A stretch of 63,581 nt of DNA, the filler included, from Guillardia theta CCMP2712 (lineage: Eukaryota > Protista > Cryptophyta): NCBI RefSeq assembly GCF_000315625.1. It is 8 parts of 8 records of this genome, joined end to end, with 100 filler letters (N's around TTAATTAATTAA, not from the genome) between each part and the next. Parts side by side here need not be neighbours in the genome. Positions count along the whole stretch, not along the records: positions 28,401 to 45,569 come from NW_005434367.1; 7 more parts are not named here. One strand, written 5' to 3'. Made by a program: the position numbers and the translations under genes. Under the pieces are notes generated by a model. That model was not told the DNA's origin. It worked only from the letters and a program-made list of their open reading frames with translations, and did no database searches. Position 1 is the stretch's first letter. The number at the start of each line of letters is the position of its first letter. Positions 1,381 through 45,569 of the stretch are shown in pieces.

Positions 1381-2187
1381 CGCTCGTACCCACGACCTCG
1401 CCATCGCTTCTGGTCGGTCGGATACACCAAACTCCAACCCCACCCTACCCTCACATACCCATGAAAGTACCCACCCTTTGCACTCAACGACATTTTTAGC
1501 AAGGAGTCGTATGAGGCCCGGGGCCCGGCCGCCCGGCGGATCACTGACCGCCGGGCCGCGGCCGCGGGGCGGCGATCATGGCATCATGGCATGATGGGCG
1601 CCGGGCGATCAGCCTGTGAGCCTCAGCCGCTGTGTGCGGACTCAGGCCGGGCTGAGCCGAACGTCGACGGTCGGAGCTCAGCGTCGGTCAGTGTGACTGA
1701 CTCGACGGGTCAGTCGAAGACCCGGCAAACAGTCGGAGACCGCTGAAAGGCTTCGGACTGACCGTAGAACAGACAGTCACAGTCACAGTTCAAGGTTCGC
1801 CGCGCGTGGCTGCGTCCGACAGTGTCTGAACTCCTTTGACAGTGAACTCACTCATATCGACTCAGTGATCATCGGATTGTGCCGGCCCGGCCGGGCCGCA
1901 CGTACTGATCCCCGGAGGGCCCGCCTCAGTTACCTTTCAGTGTGTATCCGAAGATCCGTGATCTCTCCCCTCTTTATAACATGTACCCCTACCCCCTGAT
2001 GAAATGTGACCACCCCTCATCAGGATACCACCCTACTGTCATTCAACAAGCATGTCCCCTTGAAAAATGTACAAGAACCCCCCGATCCACTACCCCCTAC
2101 CCCTACACCATAATTTACACCCATACTTTGTCATCCATATAAAGGAAATCGAGGGGGGGTGGGTGGTGTCCCTCCCCCCTTTGTACA

Positions 2188-17770: not shown

Positions 17771-19267
17771 AGTGCCAGAAAGGTCGGGGTGCGCGGCGAG
17801 GTACTGTGAGTTTAGCCAGCGGTGGTGCAGTTCTCGAGGCGGCCAGGTGGACAGACAGGCTCTCGGAGATCACCGGGTCAAAGCGACGAATGATCTGTGA
17901 CTGGCCCGTGGACTCGCGAGAGAAACGGAGATGACCCCTGGAAGAAGCGAAGCTTCGCCGGCGGGCTGGAGATGGCTTGCCCTCACCAGCGTCCTCGTTG
18001 AGGGTATTGAAGACCTTTACTCTGATCGGACGGAGTTGACTGGCACTGCATGAAAACCACCGGTTGCCACGGTGCCCATCAGGAGCCTCGGGACCGAGGA
18101 TCCCCGACTATATCGCCGCTCAGCTACCGTACTGTCCGAGTAAGGTTCAACGGTTCAACGGTTCAACGGTTCAACGACGGTTGCCCGGGACTCATCACTG
18201 AGTCATGGCATGCGGCTGAGTGCGCCGGCGCAGCCTATCCCGGAGGACTGTGACGAACTTAGAAAGTGCCGCCTGACAGTGTGTGTTTGCGCGGCACACT
18301 GCCGCTGAGCTTTTATCGGGACGGTCCCCGGGGCCCCGGATCACATGATCGGATCGCGTGGCTGCAGTGGCGGCCCGGCAGTGCCCGGCAGCGCCGGGCG
18401 CGGCCCGGGCCGGGCCTCGCCGTCGTGCCCGGCCGCATGAGGGGATGAGGGGAGGGTAGCAAGCAGGCCATGCAGGGAGGGCGGGGCGCAGCGAGTGGAG
18501 TGTTGATGGTGGCAGCGTCATGCCTCATCAGTCAGAGAGATCCTCCTCCTCTCCTGCCCTTCCTTGCCTCTCGCCGTCTCTCCCCGCTTCCTCTTCTCTT
18601 CTTCCCCTCCCCTCCACATCTTCCTTGCCATAATCCGCGCTTCACCTTGCGGGGGGGCGACTCAGTGAGGCTTGAGCGGTGGTCTCATGCGATCTAAGGA
18701 GTCATGCAGGAGGAAAATGGATGGGAAGAAGTTAGCGAGGAGCAAGCGAATGAATTCTTAGTCGACGAAGACAACGAAGGGTGAACCCTCTTCGTCCCCA
18801 TCCCTCCCCTCGTCGCTCCTTACCAACGCTCTCTTCTCCTCCCGGAAGCTGATGTCGTTCTCGCCAGCTGGGCAGGAAGGTCGTTTGAGGGCAACATCCG
18901 ATACAAGGTGCTGGAGGACGTGAACGCGTCTCAGCCGGGTGGAGCAGGAAGGTGAAAGGTTGAGAGGAGAGGAGCAGCGATAATGCCGAGAGCGAAGGGG
19001 ATGGAAGAAGCCCAAGATGGGGGACCTGGTCGTCGTCACATGCAGGCGGCTTGATGAGGTAGAAGAAAGAGCGAAGAAGAACGGAGAGCTCTAGAGCTAT
19101 ACATCTTATAGCTCCAGAGCTGTGTAAGACAAGCGCCTGACGCTGGTCGCAGAAGTGCAAGGGAGAACATGAGGGACCTCGGGTGGTCCAGCTTGGCGCG
19201 GGAGTCTTGCACGAGTCGATTGAGAAGGAAGGAAGGAGGAAGGAGGAAGGGAGGGGAGGGAGGGAGG

Positions 19268-28400: not shown

Positions 28401-28474
28401 AGACGACTGCAGCTTCAGCCCCGCCTCAGACCCCTGGAGGCCCGCCAGGAGGCTAAGTGTCCGGAGATTGGCCG
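28401..28474 (+). repeat. Partial 332-bp satellite unit at contig start
   Basis: Matches satellite segment gactgcagc..tcagccccgcctcagacccc..ggagattggccg. Confidence 0.9.
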
Positions 28475-30323
28475 CATTCCATTGGGTTCTCGACTGGATT
28501 TGTTTGTAGCAGGCGAGCCTGTTTGTACCGAGGTATAATTGAGTTTTACCGGGTTCAAGGATTTTTGTATCAGGATCCCCTTTCCCCCTCCGTACTAAGT
28601 TTGTACTGTCAATGTCAGCAATTCCCGTGGGCTGGCAGTGCTCCCTCGACTATCACCTCTACACCACCGGTATGTTTCACAAGAGATCATGTCAGGGTAG
28701 GTAGTCTGATTTCAGGAGTGGGCGAGAATCATAAAAGTCTTGGGCATTCTGGTAGTGGAATTGACGCTGAAAAGCAATCTCTTCGATTACCGTTAGGATT
28801 CGAACGCGTGGTCAAACAGCACCCACCTGAGCTAGAGTCTTGTACTCGAGTGGGGTGGCTGATGTGGGTTTGAATCGCCACGCCTTTGACCCCATTATTT
28901 CCATTCCAAACCTCGTTGTCGCGTAGGGTGGGTCACACTCTCGAGCGTTGCGAGTTTTACGGTTCGAATTTGACCAAGGTTCACCCTCTAACCCCCAGTC
29001 TCTCAATTTCAAATGGGAAAATGATGGGTAGGGGGTCCCCCCATTTGTCTCCACTCCAGCCCCCCCCTCCCTCGACGAACAAGAGATGGTGAGATTGTCC
29101 CATTGACGCGCGTGAGGACGATAATGAACAATGTGAGACTTCGAATCCTACCATGCATGGATATGCAGGAAAAGAAGATACGGTTACCTGTCTATTTGTG
29201 ATGACTTGGTCTCTTCTGTGAAATTCAAGAAGTAGAAAGGGATTTGAACTCAACATCTCATCCTCAACATAAAGCCAATGCAACATCTCTTTCATTACCA
29301 CGCTGCCTCAAATTGCACTAAAACCACTTAGATCACTTAGCTTGGGCTGAAGATGATGTCAAAGTTGAGCAAATAATTCAAATTCTTGCACAATGACGAT
29401 TGATTGAAAATGTTCAAGTGTAATTTCAGAATGGACAGAAGATGGCATAGCAACAGCCGATCTCAGCATGTATTTCGAAACTGTGATTGTAAGCAAAAAC
29501 ATCATACGAAATAGTGTCCACCTTGTGTTTCTCTCTGTCTCATGGCCTACGGTATCATTCGTGGCACAACCCTATATGGCCAGTGAGTTGCATCAGGGAC
29601 ACTGTAGATGTGCTGATTGGACAATGGCAGGTACATGATATGGTTGGCGATATTCAGAGTTTTAAGAAGATAATCGTTTGTATCAGATGCTTGTTTCAGA
29701 CGTGTCGATATGAGATTGCTTTCTACACTGAAAATCACGGCTGTGAATCGTATCATCGTGTTACTGCGGCATTGCCAATGATGTTGATGAAGCATCTTTC
29801 ATGACAACCCGTGCAAATGCCATCTTATTCTCTCTGCAAATCCTTTCTCGCAATTGCTCCAACCATGCAAATTCAGGAAAATGTCTTGTACACTCCGAGA
29901 TAGTATTGGCATGTTTGACATCTAGGCTGTGATACCAGGGATCAAGCGATATATAGAGTAGGCAGAAGCTGTATCAGTCATGCAAACTTGAATCTGCATA
30001 ACAACAGTTTCTGAAGATTGTTTATTNNNNNNNNNNNNNNNNNNNNNNNNNNNNNNNNNNNNNNNNNNNNNNNNNNNNNNNNNNNNNNNNNNNNNNNNNN
30101 NNNNNNNNNNNNNNNNNNNNNNNNNNNNNNNNNNNNNNNNNNNNNNNNNNNNNNNNNNNNNNNNNNNNNNNNNNNNNNNNNNNNNNNNNNNNNNNNNNNN
30201 NNNNNNNNNNNNNNNNNNNNNNNNNNNNNNNNNNNNNNNNNNNNNNNNNNNNNNNNNNNNNNNNNNNNNNNNNNNNNNNNNNNNNNNNNNNNNNNNNNNN
30301 NNNNNNNNNNNNNNNNNNNNNNN

Positions 30324-30830
30324 TGACGATGAGTATGTGTAAACAATCACATCTGCTAAGCGTTGCTATTGATTGCCAAGCAGAAACACACTTACAACAA
30401 CCTGGAATAGATCATCCTTGTGGTTCTTGCAGGATCATCTTCATGATAGCGGATTCCACAACCAGGAGTTAAAAGAACCCTTAAGCCCAGGGTGCTATTT
30501 GTCCATTGAGCTTCAATCGAACTCTGAGGTCGAGATAGGAGGGAACTTTGAATCTCCAAGATCAGGGGTTCATGCAAAATGGAAGGTGGTACATCTTGAA
30601 AGTCAATGTTTTCAATGGAGGACATTTTATCTCCATTTCTTCTGGTCTCGATGCCTCACAACGCAGCTGATCGTGAGCTTATGCGTATTGCAACCCCAGG
30701 AAAACATCATCGTTGGCGCGACATGCGTGCCCGACCCATTGCGTCTGATTACAAAATGTAAGGATCTGATTTGACATATCCGAAATATTTGGACATAATT
30801 TGAAATTTGAAGGGTATGTTTGTTTATTTG
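30324..30830 (-). pseudogene. Degenerate partial duplicate of the 5' end of the partner gene (copy of ~35150-35630)
   Basis: Near-identical MSSIENIDFQDVPPSILHEPLILEIQSSLL..RYHEDDPARTTR, then frameshift and stop. Confidence 0.8.
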
Positions 30831-31140
30831 CCTGAACTGTTCGTTTGTTTGTTTGTCTCTTCTGTATGTCTGTTTGTCTGTCTGTTCTGTGTATGTGTGT
30901 TTGTCTGTTGCTGTTCGTTTGTTTGTTTGTCTCTTCTGTATGTCTGTTTGTCTGTCTGTTCTGTGTATGTGTGTTTGTCTGTTGCTGTTCGTTTGTTTGT
31001 TTGTCTCTTCTGTATGTGTGTTTGTCTGCGTGAGCAAAACACAGTTTTTTTGTTTTGCTCACTACCCCTGCTTGTCTCTTCTGTATGTGTGTTTGTCTGC
31101 GTGAGCAAAACACAGTTTTTTGTTTTGCTCACTACCCCTG
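30815..31140. repeat. GT-rich tandem repeats (~74-bp and ~71-bp units); the latter carry 12-bp-stem hairpins
   Basis: GTGAGCAAAACA..TGTTTTGCTCAC at 31030-31062 and 31101-31132. Confidence 0.8.
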
Positions 31141-31508
31141 CAGAGTCAGTGAAACCCTACGACCATGCAGCAACACCCCCAAAAACACAAGTTGAACGTG
31201 GGGTGCGCTTATTATCATATGAAAAGGGGGTAGGTAGTGGGAACACAGCCCCTTTTCTGATCAAACCTCAAACACAAAACGTAGTACCTACCCATTCACT
31301 CCGGCCTACCCTACCAAATATCATGATAAATCGGTATAAAGTGTAGGTAGGGGTAGTTTTCCACCGTGTTCAGGGGTGGGGGTTATATCCCTACTATATT
31401 ACAACCTGTGCAATTGTTCTCTACCATGTGTGGAAATATTCCATGTCAAGGGCTCAACATTTGTTCTAAAATTTCATACTTGAACTGTAAAGTCGAGACC
31501 AAGCTGAA

Positions 31509-34307
31509 ATGTTCAATCAAATTGCGGAATCATTAGCAACAAATAGTAGTTTTCCCGGACAAAATCCACCCACTGATTGCCATTTTTCTCGCAACGTGTT
31601 CTCTCTACCGCAGTGCAAATGTCGTGTGGAAGATTTCAATCCTTTTCATCCATGTTGTTACCGCCGCCCTTTGGATGGCTACGACATGCAGCGAATTGTT
31701 CAAGCTTATCCTGTTCGAAGTATGGACAGCTACACGATGGCATTCCTACAAGGCTTGAATCCAACACCTTATCGTCGTGTCAACTACGATGAAGCTACCT
31801 GGAGGGGACTTGAACATTTTGCATTGCTGGAAGGCTTCATGGAGAAAACTTCTGATAAGCCTGATGTTGCTTCTTTCTTGTACTACGTTGCAAACGGATA
31901 TCTTTTTTCGCCATCGTCTGTTGTTGGAAGTACTCTGCAAGGCTACTTCAATTGCGCGAGTCGGTTGGCACACTTGAGTGCAGAATATGAAAAACTCAAA
32001 AGTGAGCATCAGCGCATGAAAGATGCAATTCCCAACATTGACAAGGTTCTAAATTTGACATTTGAGGACATTTGGAAAGCAAATTTCCCTCAGGAGATAT
32101 GCCCGGCAAATCTGGAAGACATTTCCAATGATTCTGCAGACAAAAAGCTAAGAATTCTCAAGGACATTCTTGCTGAAATAACTCCCACCTCCAATTTGCT
32201 CTCTGGAGGTCTGCAACGCATGACAGGCTTGAATGGAAGTGGCAAAGCTTTCGGCCATCTCAGTGATCTACGTCAAAGTTCCGATTCACTGTTTCACCTG
32301 GAGTCGTTTATGAATGGTTTTGCACAATCTGCATCTTTTCATTTGAAAAAGCATGCCAAGACCAACAAGAGGATAAAGAAAGCGTTGCAAAAAATGTACA
32401 ACTCTGTTTGTGCGAGAATAGACGAGCTTTCTCTTATGACTTTGCAAAATGGACTGACTCACAAGGCGTTGGACGATCTTCACAAAATGATGAAGGAAAG
32501 TGGGCTTCAAGTTATGCACAGTCCTACGGAAATCAGCAGGACGAAGGCCAAGCAAAAAAGATTAGTAGAAGAAAAGGTTGATGGAATAGTCGAGCTTCCT
32601 GGGGGCCATGGAGCAAATCTTATCAAAGTGACGGAATTGTTTTTCATGAAGCTTGTGCAGTCGACACCAGAATTGATGTCGGTCAAAGGATTGAAGTTGT
32701 CCACCTGCTTCGATAGCGTCCGACTAGGCTGTTCAGCTCAGTCAGGAACAGAGCATACAGACTTTGCAATGAATTTGATTGGAGTCTGGGATGATGCCGT
32801 GCAGTTTGCAGACTGTTTTTTCGATCAAGAAACAAGATTAAATTCTCCTGCATCGTATGTCACATTTTTACTGATCTATTTGCAAGATTCAATTGAAAAT
32901 ATCAAGGCAAATCTTTGGGATGAATATGGACTTGACTTGAAGGCATTCTTAGGCGAACTGATCTGTGCGGATGGAAGGAAGATAGCTGCTGGGCTGCATT
33001 TTTACAGGGACGACAATGGAAATTTGACGTGCATCGATGGTCGGAAACGGTCCATGAGTGACCCTGCTGCTCATCCTGAGCTCATCATTCCCCTCTCAAT
33101 TGAATTTCGTGGCGACCTCAAGGGCTTGTGGCATCTTGTCGGCATGAAAGGTAATTGCTGATAGCATGGTTGCCTCAGTGTCCTTTCTAAACGTCATTTT
33201 CGCATAGGTGCCAAGGGAGATCAATGCTGCTTGTACTGCCATGTAAAATCAGCTGAGCGTCATCTCATCTTCGATATCGCGGAGGTTCCTGAGGACATCA
33301 CTGTCGATGATTTCTGCAAGGAAAGAGCAATTCCAGCAGATGTGTTCTGGTTGGTTCACGAAGTGCTAACCAATGGAGGGCAATGCAGTATCGTACATCA
33401 ATGCATGTTCGGTGGAAAATGTTTGAGCAAGGCAGACGTGTCTAAGCTGAATGTGTCAAAAAGGAGCAAGACACTGAAACGTGGGCAGAAGGTGGTCGTA
33501 CTGAAGCAGGATCACGGAATGGAAAGAGAACATGAGGTTTTGAAAGAACATGGACTTGATTGCAAAAGCCTTGTCATTTGTGTTCTCCATCTCAAATTGC
33601 GGATTGTATACTGTGTCCTCAAGTGTGTATACAAAACAGCTCAACGAAAGCACCGAACTAAACAAGCTCAAAGCATTTTACACAAGTCTGGAATCAAGTA
33701 TAAGTTGGAAGAAAACAATGGGAAGCTTCCTAACTTGACAGGCAAACAGTGCGACGATTTGTTGAACCGAGCTATGGGACCCCTACTCGACCTCCTTTAT
33801 GATGATGTTGATGAGCGAAATAGATACACTGAGATCTACAAAGAGTTGTCATCCGTACTTTCGACATTGTCTTGTACGCATGTTTCCCATCTTACCGATG
33901 AAGACATTGGTACATTAGCGACGAGGATCAATTCATTCGTTATCAGATACGTCGTAGAATGCGGCGATAAGGAACTCTTCAGTGCTGTGTATTTTCACTT
34001 TTTATCTGCCGGACATGTCGCAGAATTATTCCACTATCATCTTTCAGAACGAAACGTTACTTTGGGTGCTCTGAGCATGTCAAGTTTGGAACTAAGGCAC
34101 AGAATTTGCGGACGACCTGCTTGGAGAAAAGGATTGATGGAAGGCAATGCAGCAGCAGGTAGAAAACGATCTCATGAAAACATGACCGAGGATCATGTAG
34201 ATACAGCGACTCTGCAGCAAATGTCTAGGAATATGAGCAATTTTTTTGCATTCAGAAATTTGCTAACGTCAGGATTAGGAACGATTGTAAATTTGTACTA
34301 CTCTTAG
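31509..34307 (+). CDS. RAG1/Transib/Chapaev-like DDE transposase, 2 exons (31509-33150, 33208-34307), ~913 aa
   Basis: 57-nt GT-AG intron joins the ORFs in frame (EFRGDLKGLWHLVGMKGAKGDQCCLYC); motifs STCFD, GDLK..G..CxxC, CVLHLKLRI, LTGKQCDDLL, YFHFLSAGHV, LGALSMSSLELRHR parallel RAG1 ESCDG, YDEK..CTLC, DALHCDIG, MNGNFARKL, YFHKTLAHV, IGAWASEGNESGNK. Confidence 0.8.
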
Positions 34308-34322
34308 TTCAGTGCCCATGAT

Positions 34323-35576
34323 TTATAACACTCTCTGTTGCCTCTTTTTCTTGTCTCGCCAATCAACCCATTGGATCTTGCCCATCATGCCACCAATGCT
34401 ACCGACTGTTTCAAAACCCACGGACATATTCCCCCGTTTGTACGACAAATACATCGGTCCGCCCACAAACATTTGTGTCAGATTTTCTTGAAGCTTCGGT
34501 GTCGACTTGAAAGGGATATCTAACACTTCTCTGAAAGCTTTATCTTGAACGATGTTCTCTGCAAATATCCATGTGAATTGTGATTTGTTCCTCTTCGCCT
34601 TGACATGTTTGAAAAGACGAGGTGGAATTAAACGAAGCAAACTCCTCATTGAAATATTCTTGCAAGTAAAGTCAAGATCTTGTGTGCCTGCTTTCTTGAA
34701 TGTACGACTCCTGGCTGTGAGCCATAGCTGCATGCTGTTCTTAATCTCTTCGATGTCTGAGACTGTCTTGAGGTAACCGGATGGTGTGAGCACTGAAGCT
34801 TCGATGCTGGAAGATACTATCTTCTTAATTGTTTGTTCAGGGTCTTGCAATTTGAAGTACGAAATCTCACAATAGGGCTTTCGACGATTGTAGTTGTCTT
34901 CATTGAAGAAAATGTACCCTACAACATCGATAATCCTTGATTGCGGTGCTTGAGACGACATAGAATCAAGAAGGAATGGATACTGAATAGTTAGCACATC
35001 CTGAATCAGGTCCAGGTCCACTTCTTCCGTGTACACTGATTGGAAGCATGTTCTCGCATTCATCGACCTCACAATCTGCCTCATGGACTTGTTTTGTAAG
35101 CCATGCTTTGAAATATTTGCATCAACTTTGTCCAAAAGATTCTTGTCATACAACATGAAAATCTCCACCCTGCAATCGGAAACCAAACGTTTGATTATAC
35201 CGTACCTTGTGGTTCTTGCAGGATCATCTTCATGATAGCGGATTCCACAACCAGGAGTTAAAAGAACCCGTAAGCCCAGGGTGCTATTTGTCCATTGAGC
35301 TTCAATCGAACTCTGAGGTTGAGATAGGAGGGAACTTTGAATCTCCAAGATCAGGGGTTCATGCAAAATGGAAGGTGGTACATCTTGAAAGTCAATGTTT
35401 TCAATGGAGGACATTTTATCTCCATTTCTTCTGGTCTCGATGCCTCTCAACGCAGCTGATCGTTGGCGCGACATGTGCCCGTCAACAGCGCCAAGGCCCG
35501 TCGCCGTGAATAATTTATGCGTGTTTTGCCAAACCCATTGCGTCTGATTACAAAATGTAAGGATCTGATTTGACAT
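34323..35576 (-). CDS. Transposon partner protein convergent with the transposase, possible divergent BAH domain (start uncertain)
   Basis: Intact ORF of ~360-420 aa; stop codon 15 bp from the transposase stop; homolog at 42846-43898. Confidence 0.7.
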   Translation of the reverse strand: MSNQILTFCNQTQWVWQNTHKLFTATGLGAVDGHMSRQRSAALRGIETRRNGDKMSSIENIDFQDVPPSILHEPLILEIQSSLLSQPQSSIEAQWTNSTLGLRVLLTPGCGIRYHEDDPARTTRYGIIKRLVSDCRVEIFMLYDKNLLDKVDANISKHGLQNKSMRQIVRSMNARTCFQSVYTEEVDLDLIQDVLTIQYPFLLDSMSSQAPQSRIIDVVGYIFFNEDNYNRRKPYCEISYFKLQDPEQTIKKIVSSSIEASVLTPSGYLKTVSDIEEIKNSMQLWLTARSRTFKKAGTQDLDFTCKNISMRSLLRLIPPRLFKHVKAKRNKSQFTWIFAENIVQDKAFREVLDIPFKSTPKLQENLTQMFVGGPMYLSYKRGNMSVGFETVGSIGGMMGKIQWVDWRDKKKRQQRVL

Positions 35577-35619
35577 ATCCAAAATATTTGGGAGCACTTT
35601 GAAATTTGCCAGGGGGTGT

Positions 35620-37518
35620 ATGTCTGCTTATCCCAACAAAACAATGCATTGGCAGAAAACAGACGAGGAACGATCTGCGCAGTTGGAGGTCAATCGAAGA
35701 AGAAAACGGGAGAGGAGGGCCCGCGAAACAGAGGAAGAACGATCTGCGCGGTTAGCAAGCCAACGAAGGAGACAATCGGAGAGGAGGGCCCGCGAAACAG
35801 AGGAAGAACGATCTGCGCGGTTAGCAAGCCAACGAAGGAGACAATCGGAGAGGAGGGCCCGCGAAACAGAGGAAGAACGATGTGCGCGGTTAGCAAGCCA
35901 ACGAAGGAGACAATCGGAGAGGAGGCAGAGGGCCCGCGAAACAGAGGAAGAACGATCGGCAAGTATGGAAACTCTGCGAAACCGCAAGCGCAGAAGTCGG
36001 AGTGCTGTTTACAATGTGTATCAAGAGGCTGCACACAAGAAAATTTCAATACGAGAAGAGCTGATGATCTACCCAGTGGACATGCGGTTTCTCAATGAAG
36101 TAGAAAAGCAGTTTGATTTAACAAGAATGGTTGGCTCGGGGACTTTCGGGGAGGTCTATGAGGCCTACGACAGGTTAAATGATCGTCGAGTAGCAATCAA
36201 ACGATTATTACCATTTCAAACCATGGATGCGCATAAGAAGGAAGCAAACTTTATATCAAGCTTGCATGGAAAATCCAACATTGTACAGCGTGTGCAAAGT
36301 CCGCCACTGGCGCCTAATGGGATAATCCTTGTCGAGGAGCAGCAGGCTTTGATTTTTGAATACTTCGAACATGACAGTCCCTCAGATTACGTCAAAGATT
36401 TGACCATCAAAGAGATTACCCACTACATGAAGAATTTGTTTGTAGCATTGAGGTCTGTACATGCCCTCGGGATCATACATCGAGACGTGAAATTGAATAA
36501 CTTCCTCTACGACAGAAGGAACAAGAAGTACTTGCTTGTGGACTTTGGGCTGGCAGAGAAGAAAATGCAGAAGACTGCTCTGGGAATTTCCACAGGACAA
36601 ACGCCTTCACCAGGCCGCAGAACAACGTCAGGGTCAATGAGCAAGTATTTCCCTGCCACGAAGAGCAACGGCTACATCTTGCCCTCTGAGAACCTGGCGC
36701 AGCAGATTGCAAAGAGGCGAAGGTTGGGCGTCAGAAGGACGAACGCATCGGAGACCGTGAGGAACTCAGGGGTCAAACTGAAACGGCTTCCAGTCAACCG
36801 CGGGGGAACCCGGGGCTACCGCGCGCCCGAAGTGCTCATGGGCAGCCACCACCAGACGAAAGCAGTGGACGTCTGGAGCGCTGGGGTGATACTGCTTACC
36901 CTGCTGTGCCGGCAGACACACTGCTTCCAGTGGTTCCGGCATGACAATGACAACTTGGCGGTCATGGAGATCTACGGGTACGCCCGTTGTGTAAGCCTTG
37001 AAGTAAGTGCGCTGGTCTGACTGTATGGTCTGAACAGCTTGCGCATGTACATCAAGAGCATGGACGCTGAGTTCCAGCACAACTATGGGTATACGGGTCA
37101 GTACAGGGATAAGATCAGAGATGTCATCGAAGATTTCAAGCTCGACGTTGAAGTAAAATTGTTGTCGTTGTTGCTGCTGTTGTTGTATCATGAGGATGAG
37201 GATGAGGATGAGGATGAGGATGAAGATGAGGATGAGGGTGATATGGTGGCGGGACTCTTAAGCTGGGGATGCTAACTTCATGTCATTCAGTTCGGACCAT
37301 TGGAACAGTATCTCAGCTATGCCCGCGGTTTGGAGCAAACATGGCGGACCTTATCAAGCGCCCTGAGCGAGGATGCGGGATGCAAGGGCTGGCTGGAGGT
37401 GGAGGAGAAACATGCGATCTGGGACTTCCTCAACCGCTGCCTCGACATCGATCCCCGCACGAGGATGACTGCAGAGGAGGCTCTGAAGCATCCCTTCCTC
37501 GCTAGTGGTCTTGAGTAA
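35620..37518 (+). CDS. CDC7-like Ser/Thr kinase with N-terminal 23-aa STPR-like repeats (introns 36978-37037, 37153-37290)
   Basis: GSGTFGEVY, VAIKRL, HRDVKLNNFLYDRRNKKYLLVDFGLAE, long insert, NRGGTRGYRAPEVL..HQTKAVDVWSAGVILL, RMTAEEALKHPF, all characteristic of CDC7. Confidence 0.8.
35656..35960 (+). repeat. 69-bp coding tandem repeat (ETEEERSARLASQRRRQSERRAR), about 4.5 copies
   Basis: Directly visible; unit is 23 aa. Confidence 0.9.
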
Positions 37519-38590
37519 ACCGTCTCTCCTCTGGCATCTCCCAGTCTCTCGCGATCAGCATATCATCGCAGTGACCTCCCAGGCTTCTCTTTCCCTTCCA
37601 ACCCCTACTCTCCCATCTCCTTCCCACCTCCCCTGTCCCCTCCTCTCTCCTCCCTCAGCCTCACAAACTCCAATGACATGTTATAATCGCCATCCCACTG
37701 GCTGTTGAGAGCATTTCACAAGACTCAAACTGTTGTGGAATGCATTGGGAGAAGCCTCAAAAAATGCAATCATGGCAAAGCACCAGCAAGTCTCTTGAAA
37801 TATGTTTCATATACAACCGACGAAGCATTCTGGTACAGGAAGCTAGGCCGTCATCGCAATAAGGAGAATAGCATTTCCTTCATGTCTTCGAAGGTTGCCT
37901 CTCTGATCGATTCCTTTCATGTTTCCCTTCTGAAAGTGTGAAAACAGCTGATCAGGGCTTTGGCACATCAGAATTGAGGTGTTTCAGTGCAAGTATGACA
38001 AGGAAAGTCACACAATTATTGGATAGCGTGAGCATGCAAATTTGAATGCATACCTTACACTATTACAAGTCAATGCACAGTTACAACTATGCTCACAATG
38101 CTTCAAAGCATATTTGCATTTACACGCAACTCAACGAACTGAGATTCAAATATTTCCTTTCCACAAAATTCTTATTGCAACATGATATGCATCATCCTCA
38201 AAACACTCTGCTTAAAGGAAATGCAGTCGTTTTCCCACATGATACATTCAAATCTGGTCAAATTTGGCATCAAAAGATGTTCTTGTCATCACATTGATGT
38301 ATGTATCTCACAACATGGTGCCCACAGGGCGCGATCTGCTTGAACGTGAGTCTCCGAAACTGACATAGTGTTCAACATTGGTACATTCGGTACAACGTTT
38401 AAAAATTCCAGAAATGGCACGGTGCTGGCAGGATCCCACAATTTGAAATGGCGTGGTTTGACAGAAGTAAAACATTTCAAGGAAAATTTTCACTTTGAAA
38501 TCCAAAACCTATTCATTAAGAAAAATCCAGGTAGAAAAAGACCCCGCCGAGACGGAATAAAATCCAGTTGAGAACCCAATGGAATGGGGC

Positions 38591-38817
38591 CTGACCGGTC
38601 ACGGCCGCCCGGAGAGATCAGGCCCCCGGCCAATCTCCGGACACTTAGCCTCCTGGCGGGCCTCCAGGGGGTCTGAGGCGGGGCTGAAGGCTGCAGTCGG
38701 TCTACTGACGGGCCCGGCCGGCAGGATCCGTCGAGAAACAGGGGGGTCAACTTCAAGGGAGGTTTTCTTCCCCCTGGGAGAAATGTCCTATGGGTTTTTG
38801 GATCTGCGATATAAAAC
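38591..38817 (-). repeat. Inverted partial satellite unit
   Basis: Reverse complement of the 332-bp unit, abutting the right TIR of element 1. Confidence 0.9.
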
Positions 38818-41586
38818 TGTTTCTCGACGATCCTGCCGGCCGGGCCCGTCAGTAGACCGACTGCAGCCTTCAGCCCTGCCTCAGACCCCAGGAGATTGGC
38901 CGGGGGCCTGATCTCTCCGGGCGGCCGTGACCGGTCAGCGGACCGTGTCAGCAGGCCCGTGACATGTCAGCCGGCTGACAGGGGCCGTGACCCGGCTGAC
39001 AGGCTCACCTGACCGGTCACGTGACACATCACGTGACCGAGACAAGACTTTTTTATATCGCAGATCCAAAAACCCATAGGACATTTCTCCCAGGGGGAAG
39101 AAAACCTCCCTTGACCCCCCTGTTTCTCGACGGATCCTGCCGGCCGGGCCCGTCAGTAGACCGACTGCAGCCTTCAGCCCCGCCTCAGACCCCCTGGAGG
39201 CCCGCCAGGAGGCTAAGTGTCCGGAGATTGGCCGGGGGCCTGATCTCTCCGGGCGGCCGTGACCGGTCAGCGGACCGTGTCAGCAGGCCCGTGACATGTC
39301 AGCCGGCTGACAGGGGCCGTGACCCGGCTGACAGGCTCACCTGACCGGTCACGTGACACATCACGTGACCGAGACAAGACTTTTTTATATCGCAGATCCA
39401 AAAACCCATAGGACATTTCTCCCAGGGGGAAGAAAACCTCCCTTGACCCCCCTGTTTCTCGACGGATCCTGCCGGCCGGGCCCGTCAGTAGACCGACTGC
39501 AGCCTTCAGCCCCGCCTCAGACCCCCTGGAGGCCCGCCAGGAGGCTAAGTGTCCGGAGATTGGCCGGGGGCCTGATCTCTCCGGGCGGCCGTGACCGGTC
39601 AGCGGACCGTGTCAGCAGGCCCGTGACATGTCAGCCGGCTGACAGGGGCCGTGACCCGGCTGACAGGCTCACCTGACCGGTCACGTGACACATCACGTGA
39701 CCGAGACAAGACTTTTTTATATCGCAGATCCAAAAACCCATAGGACATTTCTCCCAGGGGGAAGAAAACCTCCCTTGACCCCCCTGTTTCTCGACGGATC
39801 CTGCCGGCCGGGCCCGTCAGTAGACCGACTGCAGCCTTCAGCCCCGCCTCAGACCCCCTGGAGGCCCGCCAGGAGGCTAAGTGTCCGGAGATTGGCCGGG
39901 GGCCTGATCTCTCCGGGCGGCCGTGACCGGTCAGCGGACCGTGTCAGCAGGCCCGTGACATGTCAGCCGGCTGACAGGGGCCGTGACCCGGCTGACAGGC
40001 TCACCTGACCGGTCACGTGACACATCACGTGACCGAGACAAGACTTTTTTATATCGCAGATCCAAAAACCCATAGGACATTTCTCCCAGGGGGAAGAAAA
40101 CCTCCCTTGACCCCCCTGTTTCTCGACGGATCCTGCCGGCCGGGCCGGTCAGTAGACCGACTGCAGCCTTCAGCCCCGCCTCAGACCCCCTGGAGGCCCG
40201 CCAGGAGGCTAAGTGTCCGGAGATTGGCCGGGGGCCTGATCTCTCCGGGCGGCCGTGACCGGTCAGCGGACCGTGTCAGCAGGCCCGTGACATGTCAGCC
40301 GGCTGACAGGGGCCGTGACCCGGCTGACAGGCTCACCTGACCGGTCACGTGACACATCACGTGACCGAGACAAGACTTTTTTATATCGCAGATCCAAAAA
40401 CCCATAGGACATTTCTCCCAGGGGGAAGAAAACCTCCCTTGACCCCCCTGTTTCTCGACGGATCCTGCCGGCCGGGCCCGTCAGTAGACCGACTGCAGCC
40501 TTCAGCCCCGCCTCAGACCCCCTGGAGGCCCGCCAGGAGGCTAAGTGTCCGGAGATTGCCCGGGGGCCTGATCTCTCCGGGCGGCCGTGACCGGTCAGCG
40601 GACCGTGTCAGCAGGCCCGTGACATGTCAGCCGGCTGACAGGGGCCGTGACCCGGCTGACAGGCTCACCTGACCGGTCACGTGACACATCACGTGACCGA
40701 GACAAGACTTTTTTATATCGCAGATCCAAAAACCATAGGACATTTCTCCCAGGGGGAAGAAAACCTCCCTTGACCCCCCTGTTTCTCGACGGATCCTGCC
40801 GGCCGGGCCCGTCAGTAGACCGACTGCAGCCTTCAGCCCCGCCTCAGACCCCCTGGAGGCCCGCCAGGAGGCTAAGTGTCCGGAGATTGGCCGGGGGCCT
40901 GATCTCTCCGGGCGGCCGTGACCGGTCAGCGGACCGTGTCAGCAGGCCCGTGACATGTCAGCCGGCTGACAGGGGCCGTGACCCGGCTGACAGGCTCAGC
41001 TGACCGGTCACGTGACACATCACGTGACCGAGACAAGACTTTTTTATATCGCAGATCCAAAAACCCATAGGACATTTCTCCCAGGGGGAAGAAAACCTCC
41101 CTTGACCCCCCTGTTTCTCGACGGATCCTGCCGGCCGGGCCCGTCAGTAGACCGACTGCAGCCTTCAGCCCCGCCTCAGACCCCCTGGAGGCCCGCCAGG
41201 AGGCTAAGTGTCCGGAGATTGGCCGGGGGCCCGATCTCTCCGGGCGGCCGTGACCGGTCAGCGGACCGTGTCAGCAGGCCCGTGACATGTCAGCCGGCTG
41301 ACAGGGGCCGTGACCCGGCTGACAGGCTCACCTGACCGGTCACGTGACACATCACGTGACCGAGACAAGACTTTTTTATATCGCAGATCCAAAAACCCAT
41401 AGGACATTTCTCCCAGGGGGAAGAAAACCTCCCTTGACCCCCCTGTTTCTCGACGGATCCTGCCGGCCGGGCCCGTCAGTAGACCGACTGCAGCCTTCAG
41501 CCCCGCCTCAGACCCCCTGGAGGCCCGCCAGGAGGCTAAGTGTCCGGAGATTGGCCGGGGGCCCGATCTCTCCGGGCGGCCGTGAC
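38818..41586 (+). repeat. 332-bp tandem satellite, about 8 near-identical units
   Basis: Same sequence recurs at 39021, 39353, 39685, 40017, 40349, 40681, 41012, 41344. Confidence 0.97.
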
Positions 41587-41925
41587 CATGCCGTTCACAA
41601 GGTCATATGCAGGCTCTAGCAAAATTGGTCTTTTTTTTTCTCCTTGGGAAGGGGTTCATATATACACTTCCATTCAGCTACCCCGGTTTTTTCTCTCGAA
41701 ATTCAAACCAAATTCAAAACCGTGATTAAAAGTGATTTTTGGAAGTTTAGCTTATCGTTTCTTGGGTACCTTCTAAAATGTTTTAANNNNNNNNNNNNNN
41801 NNNNNNNNNNNNNNNNNNNNNNNNNNNNNNNNNNNNNNNNNNNNNNNNNNNNNNNNNNNNNNNNNNNNNNNNNNNNNNNNNNNNNNTTGAAACGTAAGGG
41901 TTCAATCAGGGGCCTCAGACCCCCT

Positions 41926-44543
41926 CATTCCATGGCATTTTCTAATGCTCGCTTTTGATCATTTTCGAGCGGGGTACTTCAGCCCAGGATTTTTGAATGG
42001 TCGGCGCACTGAAAATTTGTACCAGAAACTTCGATAATGGTTGAAAGTATGTTTGAATCGGGGACCGTGTCGAGCAGTTTTAGGTTTACAAGTATTCTTG
42101 CTTCCTCCAAACAACAAGGTTTCAAACATTAAAACTATTTTTGACCTTACACGCTTTTACACGCCTGGGGGGTGCATATACAACCAAATTGCCTGCCCTC
42201 CCCCTTCCCCCATTGCTGCATCCGCACCCGCCGGCGCAGGCGGCGTTTGTTTGAATCCCAGATGGCTCTCAGCCAATGGCTCTTTCATCGTATTCAAGCT
42301 CCAGGCCATCCAAGGTTGGATCATGTGTGAATGTTTGTACTTTTTGCGGCATACTGCAAGACGACGTTTCAAACAGCTCGAGCTTGTTTTTCAAAGGAAG
42401 CTGTAGGAATCAGCATCGCCATGGATTCCAGAGCCTAGGGCTGTTTTCGAATCCATTTGATGCTCATTGCAAGATGGAGAATTGCTCGTTTTTGGTGATC
42501 AAGCATCCACAACCCTCTTTCGTATGATTGAGCTTCGAGCACATCTCTGACTGTAGAGTTGTTTGGTGTCAAGATTGTTTCTCGTAAAGGATCTCTCTGA
42601 TTAGGCAATTGATTGTTGTTTTGATTGGCATTCTACAAGACCCATACTTCCTCCTCTCTGTGTCAACCAAGCACATAAGCATAAGGCATGTCAGTCGTGT
42701 AGGCAACTTGATTGCAAATAGATCGCAAGTGTAAGATCGATGAACTATTCAACGCCATGAATGCCGGATGTGAATGAACTTCCCTCAGGACTTCTCAGTA
42801 TCGGAACCAGCGAGCTAAGACATAAGGTAGAGTCTCCATTGAATATCATTCCTGCGAATGTAATGTTTTTATCAGTTGTGGGGAAGAGAAGCATGGAGAC
42901 AAGCGGGTGCCCAAGCGAATAAGAACATCTTGCGGATGTAGGTTTGGACAAAGACGGCGCCGATTCCGAGGTTGTGAAACAGGCAGCGAAAAGATGCTGA
43001 GGTTTTCGGAGTTCATAAACATGGCTTGTGACGAGCATGTCACACGTAAAGCGATGGAAAACAACAAACAAAAATTGTAAAGCAATCGAAAGCAACGAAA
43101 ATCAATGGAAAACAACAAACAAAAATTCTTCTCAAAGGTCTCACTCCTTGACATCAACCACTGATCGAACATCTTTTTGACCTCGGTCATATCTCGACAA
43201 ATCCGATTGTACTCCGCCGCTGAACAGAAAGTTGTTTGCGCCATCTTTTCAACGAGTGGTGCCGGGTTTGCAATCGAGAAGTGAGAGATTTTACAGTATT
43301 TATTATTTTCGATGTCGTCTTCATGAAAAAATATATACCCATGCACTCTGAAATTATCGTGGAGATCATCGTTGGCATGCTCCAACATGCAAGGAAAGCT
43401 GAAGAAACACATTTTTGGTATAGCATTTATTTCATCCGTATCCTTGTAAATTGCTTGATAACAATCACGGTTTCCAACTTTGTTCAAAATTCTTTTCAGG
43501 GCCACACAGGGCACTCGATTAGTTATAATGGTTTCGTCTACATGTTCCAAGAGGACTCCATTGTACATGATGTACACTTCGACAACCTGTGCATCTGAGT
43601 GCAGCGATTTGATCATGCCCAGTCGATTCACTTCAACGCCCCTGTGATCTTCACACTGATATTGAACCCCTGTGCCAGGCTCAAGCATAATATTCAAATT
43701 ACTGCCTGGCTTTTTCCAGTACATCCTGGGCAAGTCTCGATCATCAACTGACGTATGCAGGATCATTCGAAGCTTCAAATCTTCAGGTGTCTTTGACTCA
43801 TCACAAGTCTCTTCCTGCTCCAAGAATGTATCGAAATCTTCCTGCCTTCGCCTTCTCTGAATTCCATTTGTTGCTGATACACGACGGTGAAGATTCATTT
43901 GTTTGGTGTCTATAACTGGAGCGCAAGGGAAAGGGAAGCAACGGGGAGGGAGGGGAGCAGGGGGGAGGGAGGGAGCAGGGAGGAAGGGAGGGGAGCAGAG
44001 AGGGAGGGAGGGAGGGAGAAGAGCAGGAAGGAGGAGGGGAGGGATACTTGCAATGGGGATCTCAGGATTTTAATGAAAATTATTTGCTCTTTGATCGGGG
44101 GCAAGGGGACCTGTGTTTCGGTGGCACCCTATAGACATGGGGTAGGTATCTATATAAAACAACCGGTGTAGAAAAAAAAGATTGCCGTTGCTAGCTGGCA
44201 TACGACTCCTTAATTTGAAAACAAAAATACTTATTGGCTAGATTTACTACACTCGTCAATGGCTGACACTAATAAGATTTCATGAGCGTGTATCGAAATA
44301 TACGAATAACCCTACCCCCTCCATATCAGACAAACATACCGGTACACAGGGAAGAGAGCAGCCAAGAGGCGTGTAAGCCGGAACTCAAATGCTTAAAACA
44401 AATATAAAACAGTACTGAGTGGTACAAATCATTCTGGTACAAAATTGACTAAAAACTGTATGCTTATGATCAAATTAACAGGTACAAGTGTTTGTTAAAA
44501 GGATATTAATTTATAATTGGGCATTAGTAAATGCCATGGAATG
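41926..44543. mobile_element. 2.6-kb non-autonomous TIR element (element 2) carrying a partner-gene paralog
   Basis: CATTCCATGGCATTTTCTAATGCTC (41926-41950) vs reverse complement of 44519-44543, 23/25 identical; same CATTCCAT terminus as element 1; satellite sequence on both flanks. Confidence 0.8.
42745..43898 (-). CDS. Paralog of the element-1 partner protein; C-terminus probably frameshifted by a short internal duplication
   Basis: LEPGTGVQY..RLGMIKSL..VEVYIMY..CYQAIY..VHGYIFFHED..YCKISHF..QWLMSRSETFEK aligns with LTPGCGIRY..RYGIIKRL..VEIFMLY..CFQSVY..VVGYIFFNED..YCEISYF..LWLTARSRTFKK; NFCLLFSI is duplicated. Confidence 0.75.
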
Positions 44544-45569
44544 GGGGCCTGATCTCTCCGGGCGGCCGTGACCGGTCAGCGGACCGTGTCAGCAGGCCCG
44601 TGACATGTCAGCCGGCTGACAGGGGCCGTGACCCGGCTGACAGGCTCACCTGACCGGTCACGTGACACATCACGTGACCGAGACAAGACTTTTTTATATC
44701 GCAGATCCAAAAACCCATAGGACATTTCTCCCAGGGGGAAGAAAACCTCCCTTGACCCCCCTGTTTCTCGACGGATCCTGCCGGCCGGGCCCGTCAGTAG
44801 ACCGACTGCAGCCTTCAGCCCCGCCTCAGACCCCCTGGAGGCCCGCCAGGAGGCTAAGTGTCCGGAGATTGGCCGGGGGCCTGATCTCTCCGGGCGGCCG
44901 TGACCGGTCAGCGGACCGTGTCAGCAGGCCCGTGACATGTCAGCCGGCTGACAGGGGCCGTGACCCGGCTGACAGGCTCACCTGACCGGTCACGTGACAC
45001 ATCACGTGACCGAGACAAGACTTTTTTATATCGCAGATCCAAAAACCCATAGGACATTTCTCCCAGGGGGAAGAAAACCTCCCTTGACCCCCCTGTTTCT
45101 CGACGGATCCTGCCGGCCGGGCCCGTCAGTAGACCGACTGCAGCCTTCAGCCCCGCCTCAGACCCCCTGGAGGCCCGCCAGGAGGCTAAGTGTCCGGAGA
45201 TGGGCCCGATCTCTCCGGGCGGCCGTGACCGGTCAGCGGACCGTGTCAGCAGGCCCGTGACATGTCAGCCGGCTGACAGGGGCCGTGACCCGGCTGACAG
45301 GCTCACCTGACCGGTCACGTGACACATCACGTGACCGAGACAAGACTTTTTTATATCGCAGATCCAAAAACCCATAGGACAATTTCTCCAGGGGGAAAGA
45401 AACCTCCCTTCACCCCCCTGGTTTCTCGACGATCCTGCCGGCCGGGCCCGTCAGTAGACCGACTGCAGCCTTCAGCCCCGCCTCAGACCCCCTGGAGGCC
45501 CGCCAGGAGGCTAAGTGTCCGAGATTGGCCGGGGCCTGATCTCTCTGGCGCCGTGACCGGTCAGCGGAC
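44544..45569 (+). repeat. 332-bp satellite, about 3 units running into contig end
   Basis: Units at 44662, 44994, 45319. Confidence 0.95.

What the first reader, a model, noticed from the sequence alone, without database searches (positions are those of the whole stretch)
28475..38586. A ~10-kb multi-gene TIR transposon: RAG1/Transib-like transposase, convergent partner and CDC7-like kinase, embedded in satellite DNA
Seen: 27-bp TIRs (26/27 identical, starting CATTCCAT) with satellite sequence just outside; inside are a spliced transposase, a tail-to-tail partner gene and a kinase gene. Known: ProtoRAG elements carry convergent RAG1L/RAG2L genes between TIRs, and Transib/Chapaev ends usually start CAC. 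Inference: this may be an undescribed algal family of RAG1-fold transposons with CAT termini, a dedicated accessory protein and a cell-cycle kinase as cargo.
Basis: partly seen in the sequence, partly recalled or inferred. Interest (0 to 1): 0.92.

Follow-up and report, generated by a model that had tools for sequence, protein, structure and literature searches.

The report
Cryptophyte RAG1-fold transposon with partner gene
This is a real cut-and-paste transposon of the alga Guillardia theta whose transposase is predicted to fold like RAG1 (the enzyme that assembles antibody genes). It always travels with a second, tail-to-tail gene that is not RAG2, and this one copy also holds a CDC7-like kinase gene.

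Summary
The window is Guillardia theta CCMP2712. The 27-bp inverted repeats at 28475 and 38586 match 26/27, and a 332-bp satellite lies outside both. Inside are a one-intron 913-aa transposase, a 363-aa tail-to-tail partner gene and a CDC7-family kinase gene.

At least five related cryptophyte elements of about 5 kb have the same layout: termini starting CAT, then the transposase, then the convergent partner. None of them has a kinase.

The partner is not predicted to be RAG2-like. Its N-terminal part weakly resembles a BAH chromatin-reader domain.

No target-site duplication is seen in any copy, which is unlike Transib or RAG-like elements (5 bp).

The 10-kb copy is enlarged. Its left 2.5 kb is a 5-15x repeat and contains a duplicated partner 5' fragment. 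The kinase block has an 89%-identical paralog elsewhere in the genome.

A related metagenome contig bridges the gap with 328 bp.

Verdict: a new lineage within the known RAG1/Transib-CACTA clade. Kinase as cargo is plausible but unproven.

The parts
28401..28474 (+). Left flank: 332-bp satellite, plus orientation, ending ..TTGGCCG
   Evidence: In one search, 117 contigs of run X2 continue past 28474 with GGGGCCTGATCTC, which is the uninterrupted (empty) site.
28475..28501 (+). Left terminal inverted repeat (CATTCCATTGGG...)
   Evidence: 26/27 match with 38560-38586. Contigs of runs X2 and X6 break exactly at 28475, and X6 and L068 carry other flanks there.
28502..30026 (+). Left arm with subterminal TTTGTAC motifs; a multi-copy repeat (5-15x the transposase depth)
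   Evidence: Depth is 1000-3200 against 218 for the transposase, with ~3% differences. The first ~140 bp are homologous to the left end of the L001 element. TTTGTAC is enriched near element ends.
30027..30323 (.). Assembly gap; about 328 bp in a related copy
   Evidence: L068 bridges both sides. Loose ends of runs X1, X2 and X22 at 30026 begin like L068's filling sequence.
30416..30823 (-). Duplicated copy of the partner gene's first 70 codons (30625 down to 30416) plus its upstream region; broken off at 30416
   Evidence: 99%/90% direct repeat of 35205-35623. Translations. Also present in L068, so it belongs to the multi-copy part.
30812..31141 (+). TG-rich mini/microsatellite; the multi-copy depth ends here
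31509..33150 (+). Transposase exon 1 (aa 1-547 plus the first base of codon 548; D402 at 32712-32714, D536 at 33114-33116)
   Evidence: One 4062-nt DNA contig of run X2 is identical to 31077-34400 at single-copy depth.
33151..33207 (+). Intron (GT..AG, phase 1)
   Evidence: Sequence. Same junction in the annotated protein P0001 and colinear homologs. A frame change at the same place in L001 fits an intron there too.
33208..34307 (+). Transposase exon 2 (C555/C558 at 33228-33239, C672/H675 at 33579-33590, H811/H817 at 33996-34016, E842 at 34089-34091)
   Evidence: Fold matches.
34323..35414 (-). Convergent partner gene (363 aa plus stop); aa 31-157 (34944-35324) BAH-like
   Evidence: Homologs sit in the same position and orientation in L001, L002, L004, L005, L006 and L007. 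BAH matches, from a model with low overall confidence.
35620..37518 (+). CDC7-family kinase gene (23-aa Arg/Glu-rich tandem repeats at 35657-35957; first ORF to 37020; last exon 37300-37518)
   Evidence: P0024 is a spliced product 100% identical to it. The paralog at L064 is 89% identical in DNA.
37519..38559 (+). Right arm; the last ~100 bp are homologous to the right end of the L001 element
38560..38586 (-). Right terminal inverted repeat
38587..38816 (-). Right flank: GGGC, then ~226 bp of satellite in inverted orientation
   Evidence: (pairs I1-I20).
38817..41587 (+). Satellite array; TRF.1 units of 332 bp over 38891-41587
41926..44543 (+). Second, internally deleted element of the same family. 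TIRs 41926-41948 / 44521-44543 start CATTCCATGG (22/23). It holds a partner homolog ORF 42846-43898 (-) and a transposase C-terminal remnant 42767-42927 (+). Its right flank GGGGCCTGATC is the same satellite site as the left flank of the 10-kb element.

Best explanation
The stretch 28475-38586 is an enlarged copy of a previously undescribed cryptophyte family of cut-and-paste DNA transposons.

The canonical element is about 4.6-5.1 kb. It has short TIRs with 5'-CAT...ATG-3' termini and subterminal TTTGTAC motifs. It carries a ~900-aa DDE transposase, and a ~350-430-aa gene transcribed towards it, tail to tail.

The transposase is a very divergent member of the RAG1/Transib-CACTA ('CMCT') clade. 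By inference it binds the ends, cuts at the CA...TG termini with its D402/D536/E842 site, which is held by a zinc module (C555/C558, H811/H817), and reinserts the element, here preferentially in GC-rich DNA.

The partner is inferred to be an obligatory accessory subunit, possibly a chromatin reader through a BAH-like domain. It would fill the role that RAG2 or CACTA TnpA plays in other lineages, without being related to RAG2.

This copy has three extra features:
- a 2.5-kb left arm shared with 5-15 other, probably non-autonomous, copies;
- a duplicated partner 5' fragment;
- a ~2.8-kb block carrying a paralog of a host CDC7-like kinase gene, most simply a captured gene.
For: Organism and gene model.

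TIRs.

Mobility:
- Contigs break exactly at 28475 and other copies have other flanks.
- The P0016 subfamily has 4.63-kb copies that are 99.9% identical, with three different flank pairs.

The same architecture (termini starting CAT, transposase on the plus strand, partner on the minus strand) is seen in:
- L001, TIR 27/29;
- L002, TIR 20/24;
- L003, L005, L006 and L007;
- L004, which shows the same gene pair, though its ends were not found.

Both ends of the 10-kb copy are homologous to the matching left and right ends of L001.

Fold:
- Foldseek lists only RAG1, BbRAGL and HzTransib in its top 49 rows, best E 9e-9.
- The language-model feature search puts RAG1 clusters first, score 0.96 with 191-196 of 256 features shared.

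Motifs: conserved D, D, CxxC, Hx5H and E. In the model the two D lie on strands and the E on a helix.

Kinase: CDC7 family. It is absent from the other elements. A paralog lies elsewhere in the genome.
Against: - No target-site duplication is seen in any of five flank pairs. Known CMCT lineages make 2-5 bp duplications (PMC12730594).
- The two flanks of the 10-kb copy are satellite in opposite orientation, so this is not a simple insertion.
- The transposase region is single-copy and barely transcribed in the one RNA run laid.
- No read of G. theta itself was shown to span the gap.
- The transposase model has a mean pLDDT of only 69 and rests on 14 sequences.
- The partner model has pLDDT 49, and its BAH matches are of middling strength.
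- A predicted CACTA (Transposase_21) cluster matches the model about as well as full-length RAG1.
- Nothing shows that the kinase has ever moved with the element.
- Complex prediction of transposase core with partner gave no verdict.
Confidence: 0.7

Rival explanations
1. The 10-kb unit is not one mobile element. It is a chimera: a multi-copy non-autonomous element (28475 to about 30900) lies next to a single autonomous copy that has lost its own left end, and a host CDC7-like gene is trapped before the right end. The cause would be recombination within the satellite or misassembly of a small, gap-rich 48-kb scaffold.
For: - Depth drops from 1000-3200 to 218 at about 30900-31000.
- There is an internal direct repeat, 30416-30823 and 35205-35623.
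- The flanks are satellite in opposite orientation.
- Gaps lie at 30027-30323 and 41787-41886.
- Canonical relatives are only ~5 kb and have no kinase.
- The kinase has a paralog outside any such element.
Against: - The left and right ends are the proper, non-interchangeable left and right ends of the family. They stand in the same order relative to transposase and partner as in L001.
- The TIRs are 26/27.
- L068 shows that the left arm, the gap filler and the partner fragment are contiguous up to the TG repeat.
Confidence: 0.3
2. The transposase is closer to the CACTA/EnSpm-Mirage-Chapaev, Plavaka or ESTA branches of the CMCT clade than to Transib/RAG1. It matches RAG1 only because RAG1, RAG1-like and Transib are the clade's only solved structures.
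For: - The ESM Atlas shape search lists a Transposase_21/DUF4218 (CACTA) cluster at TM 0.49 by query, and fungal and rotifer hypothetical proteins, beside RAG1.
- C(2)C and H(3-4)H motifs and CA..TG termini are shared by the whole clade, and HHpred of ESTA transposases also hits RAG1 (PMC12730594).
- CACTA elements also carry a second, accessory gene (own knowledge).
- There is no 5-bp duplication and no CAC heptamer.
Against: - The language-model feature search gives only RAG1/RAG1_RNase_H clusters among the named top hits.
- RAG1 fragments reach TM 0.69-0.70 by row, against 0.43 for the CACTA cluster.
- The spacing from the second D to CxxC (+19/+22) equals that of RAG1 D708 to C727/C730 (own knowledge of RAG1 numbering).
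- No Pfam Transposase_21/24 hit appears, even at E up to 1.
Confidence: 0.2
3. The gene pair is a domesticated host locus, not an active transposon, and the TIRs are relics.
For: The transposase region is single-copy at this locus and barely transcribed. Transposase homologs are transcribed in Hanusia phi.
Against: - Several diverged paralogous elements in one genome each have their own matching TIRs.
- Copies 99.9% identical sit in different flanks.
- Deleted derivatives exist: the second element in this piece and the multi-copy left arm.
Confidence: 0.05

Closest known systems
Transib transposons (for example Helicoverpa zea Transib) and the RAG1 core
- D-D-E triad, with CxxC 19 and 22 residues after the second D and a His pair before the E.
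- Short TIRs that begin with CA.
- GC-rich insertion sites.
   Different: - No detectable sequence similarity by HMMER to PDB or Pfam.
- Termini are CAT, not CAC.
- The His pair is Hx5H, not Hx4H.
- No 5-bp duplication.
- Transib has no second gene.
RAG-like (RAGL/ProtoRAG) transposons, including AanRAGL of the pelagophyte Aureococcus (PMC9435367)
   Same: - A two-gene element between TIRs, with the accessory gene tail to tail with the RAG1-fold transposase (as in ProtoRAG).
- Found in a unicellular alga (as with AanRAGL).
   Different: - The partner is not predicted to be a Kelch propeller and has no PHD. Its only fold matches are to BAH domains.
- No CAC heptamer-like TIR.
- No 5-bp duplication.
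- Guillardia is not named in that paper's text-held supplements.
CMCT clade: CACTA/EnSpm, Mirage, Chapaev, Plavaka, ESTA, Lanisha (PMC12730594)
   Same: [quoted passage not shown]
- CA..TG termini (PlavakaB termini are CATCA..TGATG).
- Frequent extra genes, and captured genes such as TET/JBP in fungi.
- A predicted CACTA transposase cluster matches the model.
   Different: - No Transposase_21/24 Pfam match.
- No 2-5 bp duplication seen.
- The partner is unrelated to any named accessory protein.
- The family is restricted to cryptophytes.

Membership tests
Transib / RAG1 superfamily | RNase H-fold DDE core with the RAG1-type pre-RNase H, ZnC2/ZnH2 and C-terminal domains | tested here: met
Transib / RAG1 superfamily | Significant sequence similarity to Transib or RAG1 core profiles | tested here: not met
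   No RAG1 or Transib hit by phmmer or hmmsearch against PDB sequences, or by Pfam, at permissive thresholds. HHpred-type profile-profile comparison was not available.
Transib / RAG1 superfamily | D, D, E with C(2)C after the second D and H(3-4)H before the E | tested here: inconclusive
   D402, D536, C555/C558 and E842 are conserved in all homologs that cover them. The His pair is Hx5H (H811/H817), not Hx3-4H.
Transib / RAG1 superfamily | 5-bp, GC-rich target-site duplication | tested here: not met
   Flank pairs: GGCCG/GGGCC (window), GGCGT/GTCAA (L001), GCGTG/GTGCA (L002), ATGCG/CGGCG (L005), GCCGG/GCGAG (L006). None has a direct repeat of 5 bp, or of any consistent length. The flanks are mostly GC-rich.
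Transib / RAG1 superfamily | TIRs beginning CAC (heptamer-like CACAGTG / CACWGTG) | tested here: not met
   Termini are CATTCC, CATTCT or CATATT in all subfamilies. Only the CA is shared.
RAGL / ProtoRAG | RAG2-like partner: six-bladed Kelch propeller (plus PHD) | tested here: not met
   The partner model mixes strands and helices. The fold matches for aa 31-157 are BAH domains, with no propeller among them. No Pfam Kelch, RAG2 or PHD match. The model confidence is low, so this is not a strong exclusion.
RAGL / ProtoRAG | Convergent transposase and partner genes between TIRs | tested here: met
   Window, L001 and L002, and the 4.63-kb subfamily (L003, L005, L006, L007) between short (~10-bp) terminal repeats. 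L004 shows the gene pair but its ends were not found. The stops lie 0-76 bp apart.
CMCT clade (PMC12730594) | [quoted passage not shown] | tested here: met
   motifs; termini. The His spacing is 5 instead of 3-4.
CMCT clade (PMC12730594) | 2-5 bp target-site duplication | tested here: not met
   Same flank pairs as above. Only L002 could be read as a 3-bp GTG duplication.
CACTA/EnSpm | Transposase_21 / Transposase_24 / DUF4218 sequence families; CACTA termini; 3-bp duplication | tested here: not met
   No such Pfam hit. Termini are CAT. There is no 3-bp duplication. Only a shape match to one CACTA cluster.
CDC7 protein kinases (the cargo gene) | Best reciprocal similarity to CDC7/Hsk1 with a split kinase domain (kinase inserts) | tested here: met
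   PDB hits are CDC7 at 7e-33 in two stretches and yeast Cdc7 at 7e-31, against CK2 at 2e-22. Named database hits are almost all CDC7. A reciprocal search and the Dbf4-binding features were not tested.

The most novel reading that the evidence does not exclude
A lineage of RAG1-fold transposases, independently of the RAG1-RAG2 lineage, recruited its own convergent accessory subunit. That subunit reads chromatin through a BAH-like domain, much as RAG2 does through its PHD finger. The elements integrate without a target-site duplication at GC-rich sites, including one precise position of a megabase-scale satellite, and can pick up host genes such as a CDC7 kinase.
Probability: 0.25. Interest if true: 0.8.

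Novelty: new variant of a known kind. Interest (0 to 1): 0.62.

Why it matters
The origin of RAG1-RAG2 is usually told as a single event: a Transib-like transposase acquired RAG2 and then kept the tail-to-tail gene pair. This finding shows a distant RAG1-fold transposase in a cryptophyte alga that also keeps a tail-to-tail accessory gene in all five full-length lineages examined, down to about 22% transposase identity, yet that gene is unrelated to RAG2.

That makes two questions testable. First, is a second subunit a recurrent solution for this transposase fold? Second, is chromatin reading (BAH here, PHD in RAG2) the function being recruited?

The apparent lack of a target-site duplication, and two different subfamily members sitting at the same satellite position, would be unusual for this clade if confirmed. 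The family also adds a new, sequence-orphan branch to the CMCT clade. It provides near-identical copies that may still be active, and a possible case of capture of a cell-cycle kinase gene.

Tried and rejected
- Sequence searches of the transposase exons and of the 14-sequence profile against PDB sequences and Pfam found nothing relevant.
- The language-model search with exon 1 alone gave no usable hit.
- Partner: no credible Pfam hit (only unrelated families at E 0.03-0.1) and only noise in the language-model search, scores up to 0.81.
- The tRNA and Rfam scans of the piece found nothing. The tRNA-like strings I suspected in the left arm are not tRNA genes.
- The exact 17-base TIR scan of JGI metagenome contigs gave 55 hits. 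All are chance matches, since none extends beyond the seed.
- A TIR scan of L003 for CATTC found only matches inside long flanking inverted repeats. The true ends (CATATTGGTC..GGTATG) came from comparing copies.
- Complex prediction of transposase core with partner gave no verdict, score 0.00, and the alignments were not used. This is neither for nor against binding.
- I considered the kinases near the L001 element as possible family cargo and rejected this. They are only ~21% identical to the window kinase and lie outside the TIRs.
- I considered reading the 5 G of the satellite site as a 5-bp duplication and rejected it. The two flanks together hold 4 G, not 10.

Full report
IDENTITY AND OBSERVATION. 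The piece is from Guillardia theta CCMP2712. The 550-aa ORF at 31509-33158 is 100% identical to GUITHDRAFT_149260 (P0001), which lies on a 48-kb scaffold.

The claimed TIRs are real. 28475-28501 and 38560-38586 match 26/27 and start CATTCCAT. The first 17 bases, with up to 3 mismatches allowed, occur only at these two sites (0.1 expected).

A 332-bp satellite lies outside both ends. On the right, four bases (GGGC) are followed by ~226 bp of satellite in inverted orientation before the array resumes in plus orientation.

Inside the TIRs are three genes:
- A transposase of 913 aa in two exons, joined by a GT..AG intron at 33151-33207. The same junction is used in the NCBI model, and homologs are colinear across it.
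- A 363-aa gene on the minus strand (35414-34323), whose stop lies 15 bp from the transposase stop.
- A kinase gene (35620-37518). Its best solved relatives are human and yeast CDC7 (7e-33 and 7e-31, against 2e-22 for CK2), and its named database relatives are almost all CDC7.

THE GAP. Contigs of two G. theta DNA runs and raw reads of an RNA run all continue past 30026 with one and the same sequence, the DNA contigs for 183-213 nt and a runoff-metagenome contig for 255 nt. No listed record reaches 30324.

Metagenome contig L068 (2499 bp, no N) is a related copy. It matches 28475-30026 at 95.6% and 30324-30919 at 86.5%, with 328 bp between them. Its filling sequence begins like those loose ends.

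So the two sides are contiguous in this repeat family, and the gap is about 330 bp of repeat. For this very copy that remains an inference. No ORF of interest crosses the gap. The only frame that runs into it is a truncated copy of the partner's first 70 codons, which already ends in stop codons before the gap.

IT IS A FAMILY OF MOBILE ELEMENTS. An exhaustive HMMER search found only 13 relatives of exon 2. All named ones are from G. theta or Hanusia phi, and the rest are from metagenomes. I fetched their loci.

- L001 (G. theta, transposase 50-64% identical) holds a 5.1-kb element with 29-bp TIRs (27/29) starting CATTCCGTT. It has the transposase, then the partner on the opposite strand, and no kinase.
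- L002 (transposase ~22% identical) holds a 4.9-kb element with TIRs starting CATTCTGGGG (20/24) and a 380-aa partner ORF tail to tail.
- A third subfamily is represented by L003, L005, L006 and L007. It is 4.63 kb, with ends CATATTGGTC...GACCGGTATG. Its copies are 99.9% identical but sit in different flanks, which indicates recent movement.
- L004 has the same gene pair.

The left and right subterminal ~100-140 bp of the window element are homologous to the left and right ends of L001 respectively. A TTTGTAC motif is enriched near the ends, pointing inward from both sides.

In the read data, contigs stop exactly at 28475. Other copies carry other flanks there, and 117 contigs show the uninterrupted satellite (the empty site) continuing GGGGCCTGATC.

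WHAT THE TRANSPOSASE IS. It has no Pfam or PDB sequence match, even with a 14-sequence profile.

An AlphaFold2 model was built from that alignment. Its mean pLDDT is 69, and most of the core from residue ~300 to 780 is above 75. The model matches only RAG1, amphioxus RAG1-like and H. zea Transib in the first 49 Foldseek rows, best E 9e-9.

A language-model feature search of residues 300-800 independently puts RAG1 clusters first, at score 0.96 with 191-196 of 256 features shared.

The conserved residues are D402, D536, C555/C558, C672/H675, H811/H817 and E842. In the model the two D lie on strands and the E on a helix. The spacing from the second D to CxxC (+19/+22) equals that of RAG1 D708 to C727/C730. 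That comparison rests on my own knowledge of RAG1 numbering.

One caveat is important. RAG1 and Transib are the only members of the wider CMCT clade with solved structures. [quoted passage not shown] All share C(2)C and His-pair motifs, CA..TG termini and 2-5 bp duplications (PMC12730594).

The ESM Atlas shape search lists a CACTA (Transposase_21) cluster at TM 0.49 by query, and fungal and rotifer hypothetical proteins, beside RAG1. I therefore place the family in the CMCT clade with high confidence, and nearer to Transib/RAG1 than to CACTA with moderate confidence.

WHAT THE PARTNER IS. The partner is conserved at 23-49% identity, in the same place and orientation, in every full-length element. 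That argues for a required function.

It has no credible Pfam match. Its model is poor overall (pLDDT 49), but residues 40-145 reach 61-81. That part matches only BAH domains:
- Foldseek E from 2.6e-3 upward.
- The top ESM Atlas cluster is PF01426 BAH, at TM 0.55 by row.

These scores are middling and all rest on one model, so 'BAH-like' is a lead and not a finding. The partner is not predicted to be a Kelch propeller, so it is not RAG2-like. Complex prediction with the transposase core gave no verdict.

NO TARGET-SITE DUPLICATION. Five flank pairs show no direct repeat of consistent length. This includes the two 99.9%-identical copies, where a duplication should still be intact. Transib, RAG and RAGL make 5-bp duplications (PMC9435367, PMC10462144).

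Most flanks are GC-rich, but one flank in a runoff-metagenome contig is AT-rich.

The piece also holds a second, internally deleted family member at 41926-44543. Its TIRs are 22/23. It carries a partner homolog 28% identical to the first (E 4e-30) and a remnant of the transposase C-terminus. Its right flank begins exactly where the left flank of the 10-kb element ends in the satellite unit (TTGGCCG | GGGGCCTGATC). The other flank of each element lies elsewhere in the satellite unit.

This could mean site preference, one large composite insertion, later rearrangement, or misassembly. I could not tell which.

WHY THIS COPY IS 10 KB. Read depth is 1000-3200 over 28475 to about 30900, against 218 over the transposase. 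The transposase region is covered by one 4062-nt contig with no differences.

The multi-copy part comprises the left TIR, the left arm, the gap filler, and a duplicated fragment of the partner's 5' end and upstream region (30416-30823, a repeat of 35205-35623). It ends in a TG-rich repeat. L068 shows the same arrangement. These are probably non-autonomous relatives that share the left 2.5 kb.

On the right, about 2.8 kb lie between the partner's upstream region and the terminal ~150 bp. This block contains the CDC7-like gene.

- Its region 36029-37931 is 89% identical in DNA to GUITHDRAFT_116856 on another scaffold, which lacks 36522-37266.
- A Hanusia phi transcript encodes a 71%-identical protein.
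- P0024 is a spliced product 100% identical to the window gene, from a JGI source.

The kinase is thus an intact member of a small cryptophyte CDC7-like family that lies inside this one element. Capture by the element is the simplest reading, but there is no second copy of the element with the kinase and no evidence that it moved.

EXPRESSION. In the one RNA run laid, with about 6% of its reads sampled, the transposase has almost no reads. The left arm has up to 18x coverage, but those reads carry the variants of the other copies. Transposase homologs are present in the Hanusia phi transcriptome.

LITERATURE. The held library has no paper that links Transib, RAG-like or CACTA elements to Guillardia or to cryptophyte genomes. 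The survey that found RAGL in the pelagophyte Aureococcus does not name Guillardia in the supplements held as text. Repbase and Dfam could not be searched here.

VERDICT.
- This is a new, sequence-orphan lineage of the RAG1/Transib-CACTA clade, with CAT termini and a conserved convergent partner.
- The partner is not RAG2.
- No duplication is seen at the insertion sites.
- The kinase is a feature of this single enlarged copy only.

Noticed in passing
28401-28474, 38591-41587, 44544-45569: The 332-bp GC-rich (63%) satellite is very abundant. The summed contig depth in a G. theta DNA run is about 260,000 in the bin holding 74 bp of it, against 218 for single-copy sequence. That points to thousands of units, on the order of a megabase.
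   Followed up: partly
38587-38890: Next to the right TIR the satellite is inverted for ~226 bp and then flips back, forming a local palindrome (pairs I1-I23). The junction shares CTGA with both orientations. It could be a rearrangement linked to transposon activity or an assembly error.
   Followed up: no
28474/28475 and 44543/44544: The left flank of the 10-kb element and the right flank of the second element together rebuild one intact satellite site (TTGGCCG + GGGGCCTGATC), with no duplication and no loss. The inner flanks of both elements lie at other satellite positions. This is unexplained.
   Followed up: partly
29000-30026: RNA-seq reads (first mate on the plus strand, depth up to 18) cover the left arm but carry the variants of other copies. 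They may be transcripts started at the duplicated partner promoter of the multi-copy relatives. P0023 is a predicted 222-aa fusion ORF of this kind, from the metagenome contig L068.
   Followed up: partly
41588-41786: Between the satellite and a second assembly gap (41787-41886) lie fragments of other repeats that match L002:15122-15196 (81%) and L003:14617-14702 (92%).
   Followed up: no
35657-35957: The kinase ORF begins with 4.3 tandem copies of a 69-bp unit that encodes an Arg/Glu-rich 23-aa repeat. The paralogs P0026 and P0028 have a related, unrepeated N-terminus.
   Followed up: no
L001:6906-8239 and 16946-18279: The L001 element lies between 1.3-kb inverted repeats (97%) that carry unrelated protein-kinase genes. 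L003's element likewise lies between long inverted repeats with internal ~76-bp tandem units. Inverted duplications around three family members may not be a coincidence.
   Followed up: no
L064:10764-11870: The G. theta kinase paralog GUITHDRAFT_116856 lacks the 745 bp that correspond to window 36522-37266 (the kinase insert region). The metagenome copy L065 keeps them.
   Followed up: no
L002:18111-18601: A piggyBac-type transposase fragment (PF13843 DDE_Tnp_1_7) lies 6 kb from the L002 element.
   Followed up: no
L005-L008, L065, L068 (PRJEB17505): One 'metagenome' project holds contigs 83-95% identical to several G. theta loci (elements, kinase, left arm). It evidently contains a close cryptophyte relative, which is useful for comparative work on this family.
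   Followed up: no
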